DNA of 64,000 nt from Gracilinanus agilis (lineage: Eukaryota): positions 132,729,214 through 132,793,213 of the forward strand of contig NC_058130.1 in NCBI RefSeq assembly GCF_016433145.1, read 5' to 3'. Below, one piece after another: positions 56,050 to 59,400 of the stretch (its first letter is position 1; the number at the start of each line of letters is the position of its first letter). The notes under the pieces were generated by a model. That model saw nothing but the letters and a program-made list of their open reading frames with translations, was not told where the DNA came from and did no database searches. The position numbers were made by a program, and so were the translations under genes.

Positions 56050-56470
56050 AAGCTAGGTGGGTTGTGGAGGGCGGAGTGCGGGGGCGGGGTTTTGCTGTTC
56101 CTGGCGATGCATTGTGGGAGATGGACGCTTGCTGACGCCTCGGGCCTTAGACCGAGGTTCCTTCCGGGTGATCCATAGCACAGCAAGTCCGCCACAGACG
56201 TCCTAGAGAGAACCTGTTAGCAGGCTCTCTCGCCTGTCTTTACGTCATTTCCGTTCGACGGAAGTAACCTCCAGGTCCCTGTACCCTTACCGTCTCACAC
56301 GCTGCGCCGGTCTCGGTCCTGGTCTTCACTGTCGCTCCCTTCCCTCCACCGTTTCCTTTATCCCTTCCCTTCTCCGCCTGCCCCCACTTCTCGTCGTGAT
56401 GGCCGCAACCGTTATGTTTCGTGCACGGCCCACCGGTTAGAAAACGGGGCGGGGCGGGGCGAGAAGTTTT
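56050..56470. promoter_or_regulatory. TUFM CpG-island promoter (GC boxes, TTACGTCA CRE-like site, paired ETS/GABP sites)
   Basis: ggggcgggg near 56081; ttacgtca 56240-56247; ttccg/cggaagt 56249-56265. Confidence 0.8.
56399..56435 (+). CDS. TUFM: TUFM exon 1 ([12 protein letters not shown])
   Basis: gtgATGg in the CpG island; accg|gttaga; phase 1. Confidence 0.8.
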
Positions 56471-59400
56471 AAGTCCCTTTGACCCTAGGGCTGACCAAAC
56501 CGGCTGGGAAGGCTGATTTAGGAGGGAAAGGAGTGTGAATGGAGATCTAGGGGAATAATGGAGGAGCATCAGGGAGGGAGAAGGCAAGGCTGGATACCTA
56601 AAAAAGGACTCGCGGGAAAGAAAGGAGGGGGAGGGGCCTGCTGGATGATGGAAGGAGGCGGCGGGGTGGGGTGAAAGCTTGGAAAAGGAAGAAAAGGGGG
56701 GTGCAGAATTGGGAGCAGAAGGATAAAGGAAAAGAAGAAAGGGGTTCTGGGATGGCAGAAGAGTTGAGAAGGAAGGGGTCTAGGAGAGAATGGGCAGGGG
56801 CATGCGAAGAGTAGGGAAAATGAGAACATCTGCCCTTTTCTACTCCAAATACTTTTTCTTGTCAGTTTTTCAGAGCTACCGGCTGCTGCACAAGTTTTTG
56901 AAACAGGTAAGATCAAAGGAGTTGAAGGAAATTTATCAATGGAGTTATCACTGTCTGTTTACTAACACCTCATATCTTTTCCCCCAACCCTCCAAAGGGC
57001 ATGGAATTTTTTTTTCCCTGTTGTATTGATCAGTTTCCTTTCTATTCAGGCCCAACTTTCTAACCCGGGGCAGAAGCCCTCCCTTCCCACGATTTCACGG
57101 AGCCTTGCTGTTGAGGCCAAGAAGACATATATAAGAGACAAACCCCATATTAATGTTGGCACAATTGGCCACGTGGATCATGGCAAGACTACACTGACAG
57201 CAGCAATCACCAAGAGTAAGGATGAGGAGATGTTTATATAAGGGGGAGAACAGTGTTTTGGTTAGCGCCAAGGATAAAAGAAATTATAAATAGGTGGGGA
57301 TTTTAAAGTAGCACTGATATTCTTTTAAGTCCAGGAACCATGATGGGAATAGAAAAAGAAGCTAAGAGGATCTCTGTTTCCCAGATGTCATTTTCTTTGC
57401 TTTGGGTATGGGATCTAGACACTGTTAGGGTAAGGAGATGGTTAGAAGGGGAAGGGATAGAGTGCCAAATGGAAGTGTATACGTTCCCTTCAAATAATTC
57501 CTCTCTTCTGGTTTCAAGTTTTGGCAGAGGGTGGTGGGGCCAAGTTTAAGAAGTATGAGGAGATCGACAATGCACCAGAGGAACGAGCCAGGGGTATTAC
57601 CATCAATGCAGCCCATGTGGAGTATAGTACAGCCACTCGACACTATGCCCATACTGACTGTCCTGGCCATGCTGACTATGTTAAGGTGAGCAGAACACAC
57701 CTGGGCAACTCCAGGCAGAGATGGCTGAAGGAACTGGGAGCTTTGGGGAAGATAGAAAAATGCTGTGGTTGTAAAGTGAACTTTTGGTAAAAAGAAAGCA
57801 GAAAACAAGTTAAGAGGGGTTTGAGGGGAGGACTTGAGGCCCTGGGAAAAGGCCCCAGGGAAGGAACAAGCAGGATAATTTGAAAGCCAAAAAGGATTTA
57901 TATGTTCAACTAGTATCATTCTCTGTCTCCAGAACATGATTACTGGCACAGCCCCACTGGATGGCTGCATCCTGGTGGTGGCAGCCAATGATGGCCCCAT
58001 GCCTCAGACAAGGGAGCACCTTCTGCTTGCCAAACAGGTACCAGTCTCTCCAGATGGATCCTTGATAGAGACATCTGGGGTGAGGGAGTATGGTAAAGGG
58101 AAAGAGAGGCAGTCCTTACATGAGCTTTGAGGTCAGGGCATGAATTCATTGGGGAAAGTAATCAGAATCATTTTCTATGACATTTTAAACTTTCTTTTTA
58201 AAGTTGCATGTGAACTTTATAACAAGAGCAAATTTCTTTCACTAGATTGGTGTGGAGCACATGGTAGTGTTCGTGAACAAGGCAGACGCTGTCCAGGACA
58301 ATGAGATGGTGGAACTAGTAGAGCTAGAAATAAGGGAGCTGCTTACTGAGTTTGGCTATGATGGGGAGAAGACTCCTGTCATTGTTGGTTCTGCCCTCTG
58401 TGCCCTTGAGGTAAGGAGAAGGCCACAGGTTGGGAGATTAATTCTCCCTGGGGTTCTTTTTCCATTCTGTTTCATGGAGTGAATCTGTTTAGGAATACCT
58501 TTGAGAGGATAGTGACAGAAAACAACTCCCTTACTTGGTCACTCTGCTGCCAGTGACACTGTCAGAGATAATCCTGAACTGGATTGAATTTGGGTCCGAC
58601 CCACTGTCCTTAAGGTCTTATAGAGAAGTTGCTGGAAGACAGAATAGGAACTTTAGGCCATGTACCACATCTCTCTCCTGCTGCTGCTGCCTTGTACTTT
58701 CATCCCCTCTCAGAGAAAAAGCTGGCCTTTCCCTGACCCTTGTGCCTCTCTCTAACTCCAGCAACGGCAGCCAGAGTTAGGGGTGAATGCTGTAATGAAA
58801 CTGTTGGATGCTGTGGACACTCATATTCCTGTGCCTACTCGGGATCTGGAGAAGCCCTTCCTGCTGCCAGTGGAATCTGTTTACTCTATCCCTGGTGAGA
58901 TTACAGTTCTACATTTTCTCTAGTTCTTTCCTGCTTCCCTTGATAGGGAAGTTAGGTTAGGACCTAGTTAGGTTAGGACCATCCCTGCTTGGTATTTTTA
59001 ATTTCCCAATGATACCGATACCCTCCCCACATTTTAAATTGTTCTGTTCCAGGCCGAGGCACAGTGGTGACAGGGACTCTGGAAAGAGGAACTGTGAAGA
59101 AGGGAGATGAATGTGAATTCCTGGGTCACAGCAAGAATTTTCGCTCTGTGGTCACAGGTAAAGCCTACATTCCACCATCAATCTTTTTCTTCAGTTGCTT
59201 ACATTAGGCTGAGGCCTTGTCCCCCCCTTCCTGTTCCTGCCTTGAAGTTGCTCTCCTATTGCAGGAATTGAAATGTTTCACCAGAGTCTGGAACGAGCTG
59301 AGGCTGGAGATAATCTTGGTGCATTAATTCGGGGGCTGAAGAGGGAAGATGTTCGACGAGGCATGGTGATGGTTAAACCAGGCTCCATTCAGACCCATCA

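What the first reader, a model, noticed from the sequence alone, without database searches (positions are those of the whole stretch)
56399..57100. TUFM mitochondrial presequence is split by an extra, frame-obligatory 41-nt exon
Seen: exon 1 ends in phase 1, but the exon carrying the G1 motif opens in phase 0, so direct joining gives GGC CCA ACT TTC TAA. A 41-nt exon at 56866-56906 with strong splice sites repairs the frame. The result is [51 protein letters not shown], a basic, acid-free presequence with the usual R-x-L-AVEAKK cleavage context. I recall human TUFM having 10 exons with no intron here. This implies intron gain or loss, rare in mammals, or exon recruitment. Skipping the exon, or using its inner AG (56873), would be unproductive and so offers a possible NMD control point.
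Basis: partly seen in the sequence, partly recalled or inferred. Interest (0 to 1): 0.7.

Follow-up and report, generated by a model that had tools for sequence, protein, structure and literature searches.

The report
Ancestral 41-base TUFM presequence exon
The 41-base exon is a real, always-included part of this marsupial's mitochondrial EF-Tu gene, but it is the old vertebrate layout (fish have it too); placental mammals lost the intron behind it, so the locus is ordinary.

Summary
Observation confirmed. Exon 1 (56399-56435) ends in phase 1, a 41-nt exon (56866-56906) restores the frame, and the G1 exon starts at 57050. It ends at 57215, not 57216. Transcript contigs from three runs of the source species carry the joints 56435>56866 and 56906>57050. 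One run of a related marsupial (about 92% alike) joins exon 1, the small exon and the G1 exon too. No contig skips the exon, uses the inner AG or brings in another first exon.

Interpretation partly right. Placental mammals do have one intron fewer here, but it is the intron behind the small exon (56907-57049, phase 0). Intron 1 (phase 1) is shared. A teleost-like contig and two other non-placental vertebrate contigs each have a 47-nt exon in the same place, with the same phases. A spliced fish-like transcript fragment contains that segment. A non-human placental contig has one fused 195-nt exon.

So the small exon is ancestral, and placentals lost intron 2. This is neither intron gain nor exon recruitment in the marsupial. 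The NMD-switch idea has no support, although contigs cannot exclude rare isoforms.

Side note: intron 1 has a weak donor (GTTAGA) and shows sizeable unspliced signal. Ordinary gene structure; low interest.

The parts
56399..56435 (+). TUFM coding exon 1 (12 codons + 1 base, phase 1 end). The 5'UTR reaches back to at least about 56276.
   Evidence: Contigs 56276/56281/56298-56435 and the joint to 56866 are.
56436..56865 (+). Intron 1 (430 nt, phase 1), purine-rich, with a weak donor GTTAGA and a (CGGGG)3 run at 56445-56461. Read-through meets TAG at once.
   Evidence: Joint, composition, repeat, read-through.
56866..56906 (+). Small coding exon 2 (41 nt, phase 1 to phase 0). It encodes [14 protein letters not shown], the middle of the presequence.
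   Evidence: Joints on both sides in X20-22; X5 joins exon 1 to it (aligned 56431>56865, 9 letters between) and has 56906>57050. Frame. Homologous 47-nt exons in L001, L003 and L007.
56872..56873 (+). Inner AG, 8 nt inside exon 2. Its use would shift the frame.
   Evidence: No contig uses it.
56907..57049 (+). Intron 2 (143 nt, phase 0). This is the intron that placental mammals lack.
   Evidence: Joint in all 4 runs. Absent in L004.
57050..57215 (+). Exon 3 (166 nt): end of the presequence, R-S-L|AVEAKK context, G1 motif GHVDHGKT.
   Evidence: (GTP_EFTU).
57519..57685 (+). Exon 4.
   Evidence: Loose-end letters at 57215 match 57519 onward. GTP_EFTU.
57933..58037 (+). Exon 5 (predicted from GT/AG sites and an open frame).
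58246..58410 (+). Exon 6 (predicted).
58762..58894 (+). Exon 7 (predicted).
59053..59157 (+). Exon 8 (predicted; the acceptor was chosen to keep the GRGTVVTG motif).
59265..59416 (+). Exon 9 (predicted).
   Evidence: (GTP_EFTU_D2).
59539..59658 (+). Exon 10 (predicted).
60171..60344 (+). Exon 11 with the stop codon. The model has 454 residues in all.
   Evidence: (GTP_EFTU_D3).

Best explanation
This is the 5' end of the marsupial orthologue of TUFM (mitochondrial EF-Tu). The 41-nt piece is constitutive coding exon 2. It lies between a phase-1 and a phase-0 intron and encodes the middle of the mitochondrial targeting presequence. In this species that segment is strongly amphipathic and basic. 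The three-exon layout (short exon 1, small exon, G1 exon) is the ancestral layout of bony vertebrates. Placental mammals precisely lost the phase-0 intron, which fused the small exon to the G1 exon and gave their 10-exon gene. Shown: the splicing in two marsupials, the same layout in other vertebrates, and the fused exon in placentals. Inferred: loss on the placental stem, and the mechanism of loss (most likely recombination with a spliced cDNA).
For:: the e1-e2 joint in 3 runs of the source species, the e2-e3 joint in those and in X5 (a related species), where one 357-nt contig spans e1-e2-e3; no alternative joints; skipping, the inner AG or intron-1 read-through all hit stops; the exon 2 peptide has a hydrophobic moment of 0.75 against 0.42 +/- 0.15 for shuffles. 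EF-Tu domains on the exons; the best named hit is wombat TUFM; 11 placental-type genomic fragments run without a break from the LQG..K segment into AP..AVEAKK; placental L004 has a 43-nt exon 1, a 102-nt intron and one 195-nt exon. L001, L003 and L007 each have a 47-nt AG/GT-flanked exon 90-105 nt upstream of the G1 exon; in L007 exon 1 is also 37 nt and phase 1, and skipping the small exon breaks the frame; the intron-1 acceptor aligns in all five loci; the small-exon donor is present in the four non-placentals only; the spliced fragment P0057 holds the small-exon segment.
Against: The small exons in L001, L003 and L007 are predicted from DNA. Only P0057, from a different fish-like source, gives RNA-level support outside marsupials. 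The species of L001, L003, L004 and L007 are not named by the tools. No monotreme, afrotherian or xenarthran was examined, so the timing of the loss is not pinned down. The human structure (nine introns, Ling et al. 1997) comes from memory; no human DNA was looked at. One UniRef fish model (Hucho hucho, P0045) and the wombat model (P0001) lack the small exon, which I read as annotation errors.
Confidence: 0.9

Rival explanations
1. Lineage-specific novelty, the reader's reading: an intron gain or recruitment of a new exon in the marsupial lineage split a formerly continuous presequence exon.
For: Placental genomic fragments have no intron at the K|A point.
Against: A teleost-like locus and two further non-placental loci have the same intron with the same phase and a 47-nt exon. 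P0057 shows the segment in mRNA. The peptide of the small exon is homologous to the middle of placental exon 2 (shared CTGCA core and LQG/LLH motif), so nothing was recruited.
Confidence: 0.03
2. The small exon is a regulated switch. Skipping it, or using the inner AG at 56873, makes frame-shifted mRNA that is removed by NMD and so tunes TUFM output.
For: Both events would give early stops. The two AGs lie 8 nt apart and the second has a T-rich context. L007 shows a similar AG pair 7 nt apart.
Against: No contig in four runs shows either event. The exon has a strong donor and a good acceptor. NMD targets are rare in steady-state RNA and contigs drop rare variants, so the test is weak.
Confidence: 0.06
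3. Artefact: a misassembly or a pseudogene copy, so that the split is not in the working gene.
For: None found.
Against: Spliced contigs match the window at 100% in three runs. The frame is open through all 11 exons to 454 residues. An SH2B-type gene lies head to head upstream.
Confidence: 0.01

Closest known systems
Placental (eutherian) TUFM gene, 10 exons and 9 introns (human: Ling et al. 1997, Gene 197:325, from memory; non-human placental contig L004 examined here)
   Same: Same gene and same intron 1 (phase 1, acceptor aligned). Same downstream exon pattern as far as L004 reaches. Same AVEAKK start of the mature protein.
   Different: Placentals have the small exon and the G1 exon fused into one 195-nt exon, with no intron 2. 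Exon 1 there has 43 coding bases against 37 here.
Teleost tufm 5' structure (L007; spliced fragment P0057)
   Same: Exon 1 of 37 nt ending in phase 1, a small exon, then a phase-0 intron before the G1 exon. The small exon is frame-obligatory.
   Different: The small exon is 47 nt, not 41. The part of the presequence in exon 3 is shorter: 10 codons before AAEAKK, against 18 before LAVEAKK. Introns are 666 and 90 nt.
Precise intron loss in mammalian housekeeping genes (mRNA-mediated / reverse-transcriptase model; Zhu and Niu 2013, PMC3652778)
   Same: A short intron (143 nt here, 90-105 nt in the outgroups) of a highly expressed housekeeping gene, removed cleanly with the reading frame kept.
   Different: The lost intron lies at the 5' end, whereas the model predicts a 3' bias, and the neighbouring intron 1 was kept. 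The mechanism was not tested here. TUFM is not in that paper's supplements.

Membership tests
TUFM / mitochondrial EF-Tu orthologue | EF-Tu domain set (GTP-binding domain, domain 2, domain 3) | tested here: met
   PF00009, PF03144 and PF03143 on the exons, each above its gathering score.
TUFM / mitochondrial EF-Tu orthologue | N-terminal basic, acid-free presequence before AVEAKK, with Arg at -3 | tested here: met
   7 K+R and 0 D/E in the first 45 residues, with R-S-L before AVEAKK. That this is the cleavage context rests on UniProt knowledge of the bovine and human proteins (memory).
TUFM / mitochondrial EF-Tu orthologue | Closest named relatives are vertebrate TUFM, with conserved neighbourhood | tested here: met
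   the best hit is Vombatus ursinus TUFM (88%). Phe_ZIP and SH2 exons of an SH2B-type gene lie on the minus strand upstream. The human head-to-head arrangement is from memory.
TUFM / mitochondrial EF-Tu orthologue | Import into mitochondria and cleavage of the presequence | not testable with these tools
   No targeting predictor or experiment was available.
Constitutive coding exon | Both splice junctions present in RNA | tested here: met
   both joints in X20-22; in X5 the e2-e3 joint plus one contig that spans e1-e2-e3.
Constitutive coding exon | Needed for the reading frame; conserved in position and phase in other lineages | tested here: met
NMD-coupled alternative splicing switch | Recurrent unproductive junctions (exon skipping or an alternative acceptor) in RNA | tested here: inconclusive
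   none seen, but only contigs were available and these drop rare forms.
Precise intron loss (in placentals) | Intron present at the same site and phase in outgroups, absent with an unbroken reading frame in the derived group | tested here: met
   Eleven placental-type fragments are contiguous across the site.
Precise intron loss (in placentals) | cDNA-mediated mechanism | not testable with these tools
   Inference only. The human processed TUFM pseudogene is recalled from Ling et al. 1997.

The most novel reading that the evidence does not exclude
Intron 1, not the small exon, may be the regulated step. Its donor is weak (CCG|GTTAGA) and a G-run follows it. In all three RNA runs of the source species, unspliced unitigs over intron 1 have word depths of 9.8-15.9, against 17.4-22.8 for the spliced e1-e2 unitig. 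Intron 2 shows none and intron 3 shows 0-4.9. Retention meets a TAG two codons in, so a detained or retained first intron could throttle TUFM output in this marsupial. Alternatively, the signal comes from another transcript of the shared TUFM/SH2B1 promoter region.
Probability: 0.15. Interest if true: 0.35.

Novelty: already known. Interest (0 to 1): 0.15.

Why it matters
It matters little for biology. The exon is the normal, ancient second coding exon of vertebrate TUFM.

Two modest points remain. First, the placental 10-exon gene is the derived state. It arose through a clean loss of a short 5' intron in a housekeeping gene, which is a small addition to the catalogue of mammalian intron losses. 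The loss is at the 5' end, which is less typical for the cDNA model. Second, automatic gene models (a wombat and a salmonid UniRef entry) miss this small exon and patch the frame with invented sequence. The exon is therefore a useful check for annotation of TUFM presequences.

Tried and rejected
- Literature on TUFM exon numbering and intron positions gave nothing usable.
- A search for TUFM with 'intron loss' found no paper. TUFM is absent from the supplements of Zhu and Niu 2013.
- A search for the SRA/ENA accessions of the outgroup contigs, to name their species, found no paper. Pfam on the other ORFs of L001 found no family.
- I tested whether the small exon always encodes an amphipathic helix. 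This holds only here (0.75, 1.5% of shuffles reach it). It does not hold in L001, L003 or L007, so I dropped it as a conserved property.
- I looked for an alternative in-frame route without the small exon. Only a donor at 56410 (ACC|GTTATG) would work, and no contig uses it.
- Rfam found no RNA family in 54000-62000. There is no meaningful minus-strand ORF in the region.
- The third word search and the big representative search were not used, because the question was already settled.
- The spliced (joined) protein was never sent to a search tool. Exons and stop-free stretches were searched by reference, and joined translations were made only locally for frame checks.
- No contig of the primate-like fragments (P0003, P0005) was fetched, to stay clear of human DNA.

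Full report
**What is there.** Window 56399-60344 (+ strand) carries a complete gene for mitochondrial elongation factor Tu (TUFM).
- Pfam places GTP_EFTU, GTP_EFTU_D2 and GTP_EFTU_D3 on its exons.
- The best named relative of the G1 exon is the wombat TUFM entry at 88% identity, so the genome is a marsupial.
- With GT/AG sites and an open frame, the gene resolves into 11 coding exons and 454 residues.
- Upstream on the minus strand lie exons with a Phe_ZIP and an SH2 domain. This is an SH2B-type gene, head to head with TUFM. It fits two earlier notes on this window and the human arrangement as I remember it.

- The ATG at 56399 is the first ATG of the transcript. Contigs begin at 56276-56298 and there is no ATG in 56200-56398.
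- Exon 1 is 37 nt and ends in phase 1 at 56435. The small exon 56866-56906 is 41 nt. Exon 3 opens at 57050 in phase 0.
- Joining exon 1 straight to exon 3 stops after 16 codons. Using the inner AG (exon from 56874) also stops. Reading on into intron 1 meets TAG two codons later.

**RNA evidence.** Only contigs were on offer.
- Runs X20-X22 come from the same study as the probable source DNA run. They are small assemblies that carry spliced joints, so they are RNA. All three have the joints 56435>56866 and 56906>57050, both GT..AG, at 100% identity.
- Run X5 belongs to another organism and another study. One 357-nt contig there, about 92% alike, spans exon 1, the small exon and exon 3. It carries six extra in-frame bases at the end of exon 1.
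- No contig skips the small exon, uses the inner AG, or joins a different first exon to 56866 or 57050.
- Contigs show presence, not absence, so rare forms remain possible.

**Comparison with other lineages.** I searched the stop-free stretch around exon 3 by reference and read the hits.
- *Placentals.* Many placental-type genomic fragments read straight from a segment like ..LLQGLLRPLK into AP..LCRGLAVEAKK. Eleven distinct clusters do so. Several show an acceptor-like ..PAG just before the L that follows Gly-15.
- *One placental contig in detail.* L004 is not human, judging by its presequence. It has a 43-nt coding exon 1 ending in phase 1, a 102-nt intron, and then one 195-nt exon that runs to the AAITK donor. 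Placentals therefore keep intron 1 and lack intron 2.
- *Non-placentals.* Fragments P0030 and P0036 and several fish fragments start with an acceptor-like ..LQ directly before the last 10-18 presequence codons. I fetched their contigs.
  - L001 and L003 each hold a 47-nt exon with a good acceptor and a GTAAGA donor, about 100 nt upstream of the G1 exon. It is phase 1 in and phase 0 out.
  - L007 is teleost-like. Its first 12 residues are identical to those of the Hucho hucho entry. It has a 37-nt phase-1 exon 1, a 666-nt intron, a 47-nt exon and a 90-nt intron before the G1 exon. Skipping the small exon breaks the frame there too.
- *Alignment.* The intron-1 acceptor AG lines up in all five loci. 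The donor after the small exon is present in the four non-placentals, while the placental sequence simply runs on.
- *RNA support outside marsupials.* A second word search with the fish fragment found P0057. This is a spliced fragment, since it continues AAITK-VLAA into exon 4. It carries 12 residues, then a 16-residue LQLSS..-type segment, then the exon 3 sequence. The small exon is therefore in mRNA outside marsupials.

**Reading.**
- The small exon is the ancestral second coding exon of vertebrate TUFM. It is 47 nt in three outgroups, 41 nt here after a 6-nt deletion, and the equivalent of 53 nt in L004.
- The marsupial state is primitive. The placental 10-exon gene arose by precise loss of the phase-0 intron.
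- The mechanism of loss was not tested. The usual model is recombination with spliced cDNA (PMC3652778, abstract). The loss of a single 5' intron fits that model only moderately.

**Function of the exon.** It supplies 14 residues in the middle of the presequence. In this species the segment is markedly amphipathic: the hydrophobic moment is 0.75, and 1.5% of shuffles reach it. The first 45 residues are basic and acid-free. The amphipathic signal is not significant in the three outgroup exons, so I do not claim it as conserved. Import and cleavage were not testable.

**The NMD-switch proposal.** It rests only on the fact that mis-splicing would be unproductive, which is true of most frame-obligatory exons. 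Nothing supports it.

**A side observation that is more suggestive.**
- Intron 1 has a weak donor (GTTAGA), and a (CGGGG)3 run follows it.
- It is covered by unspliced unitigs at word depths of 9.8-15.9, against 17.4-22.8 for the spliced e1-e2 unitig, in all three runs.
- Intron 2 has no unspliced unitigs, and intron 3 has 0-4.9.
- Contig depth is a poor measure and the contigs are unstranded. This is a lead, not a finding.

**Limits.**
- The species of L001, L003, L004 and L007 are not named by the tools.
- No monotreme or basal placental was examined.
- The human exon count comes from memory of Ling et al. 1997, and no human DNA was used.
- The spliced protein was not sent to any search tool. 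Exons were searched by reference, and joined translations were made only in local scripts.
- No paper in the searchable library links TUFM with intron loss. The exon structure itself is visible in ordinary gene models, however, so I rate the finding as already known and of low interest.

Noticed in passing
window 56436-56865: Intron 1 is covered by unspliced unitigs in all three RNA runs of the source species, at word depths of 9.8-15.9 against 17.4-22.8 for the spliced e1-e2 unitig. Intron 2 has none. The donor is weak (CCG|GTTAGA), and the intron is purine-rich (GC skew 0.43). This could be intron retention or detention, or another promoter-associated transcript.
   Followed up: partly
P0001 (Vombatus ursinus, UniRef) and P0045 (Hucho hucho, UniRef): Both automatic gene models lack the small exon. 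The wombat model reads on from exon 1 into intron sequence (..PGPSGRRARRREA) and then joins the G1 exon. The salmonid model joins exon 1 to ..VPFTRR.. directly. These are probably annotation errors caused by the small exon.
   Followed up: partly
window 56431-56435 (run X5): The related marsupial (organism A) has six extra in-frame bases (GGGCCC, two codons) at the end of exon 1. That makes 43 coding bases, the same length as in the placental contig L004. The window's 37 nt equals the teleost-like L007.
   Followed up: no
window 55512-55557: Many contigs from X21 and X5 lie on this short stretch only, with unrelated loose ends on both sides. It is an interspersed repeat, not part of TUFM.
   Followed up: no
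P0126, P0129, P0186 (unnamed sources): These more distant EF-Tu N-terminal fragments look like non-vertebrate animals. They also begin with an acceptor-like ..FQ or ..LQ a few codons before R-x-Y-AAE. The phase-0 intron before the mature N-terminus may therefore be older than vertebrates.
   Followed up: no
window 34614-35027 and 37533-38675, minus strand: Exons with an SH2 domain and a Phe_ZIP domain, which mark an SH2B-type gene. It is transcribed away from TUFM, so the two genes probably share a promoter region near 56.0-56.3 kb.
   Followed up: partly
L007 5880-5892: The teleost-like small exon also has two AGs 7 nt apart at its acceptor (ctcag|CCCTTCAG|C), and only the first is in frame. 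This resembles the AG pair at window 56865/56873 and is probably coincidence.
   Followed up: no
L003 1-120: The start of this contig looks like the tail of a BovB-type retroposon (..gttgcaatggatcggacacaattttgcaactaacaacaa). I recognised this from memory only. It may hint at a squamate origin of the contig.
   Followed up: no
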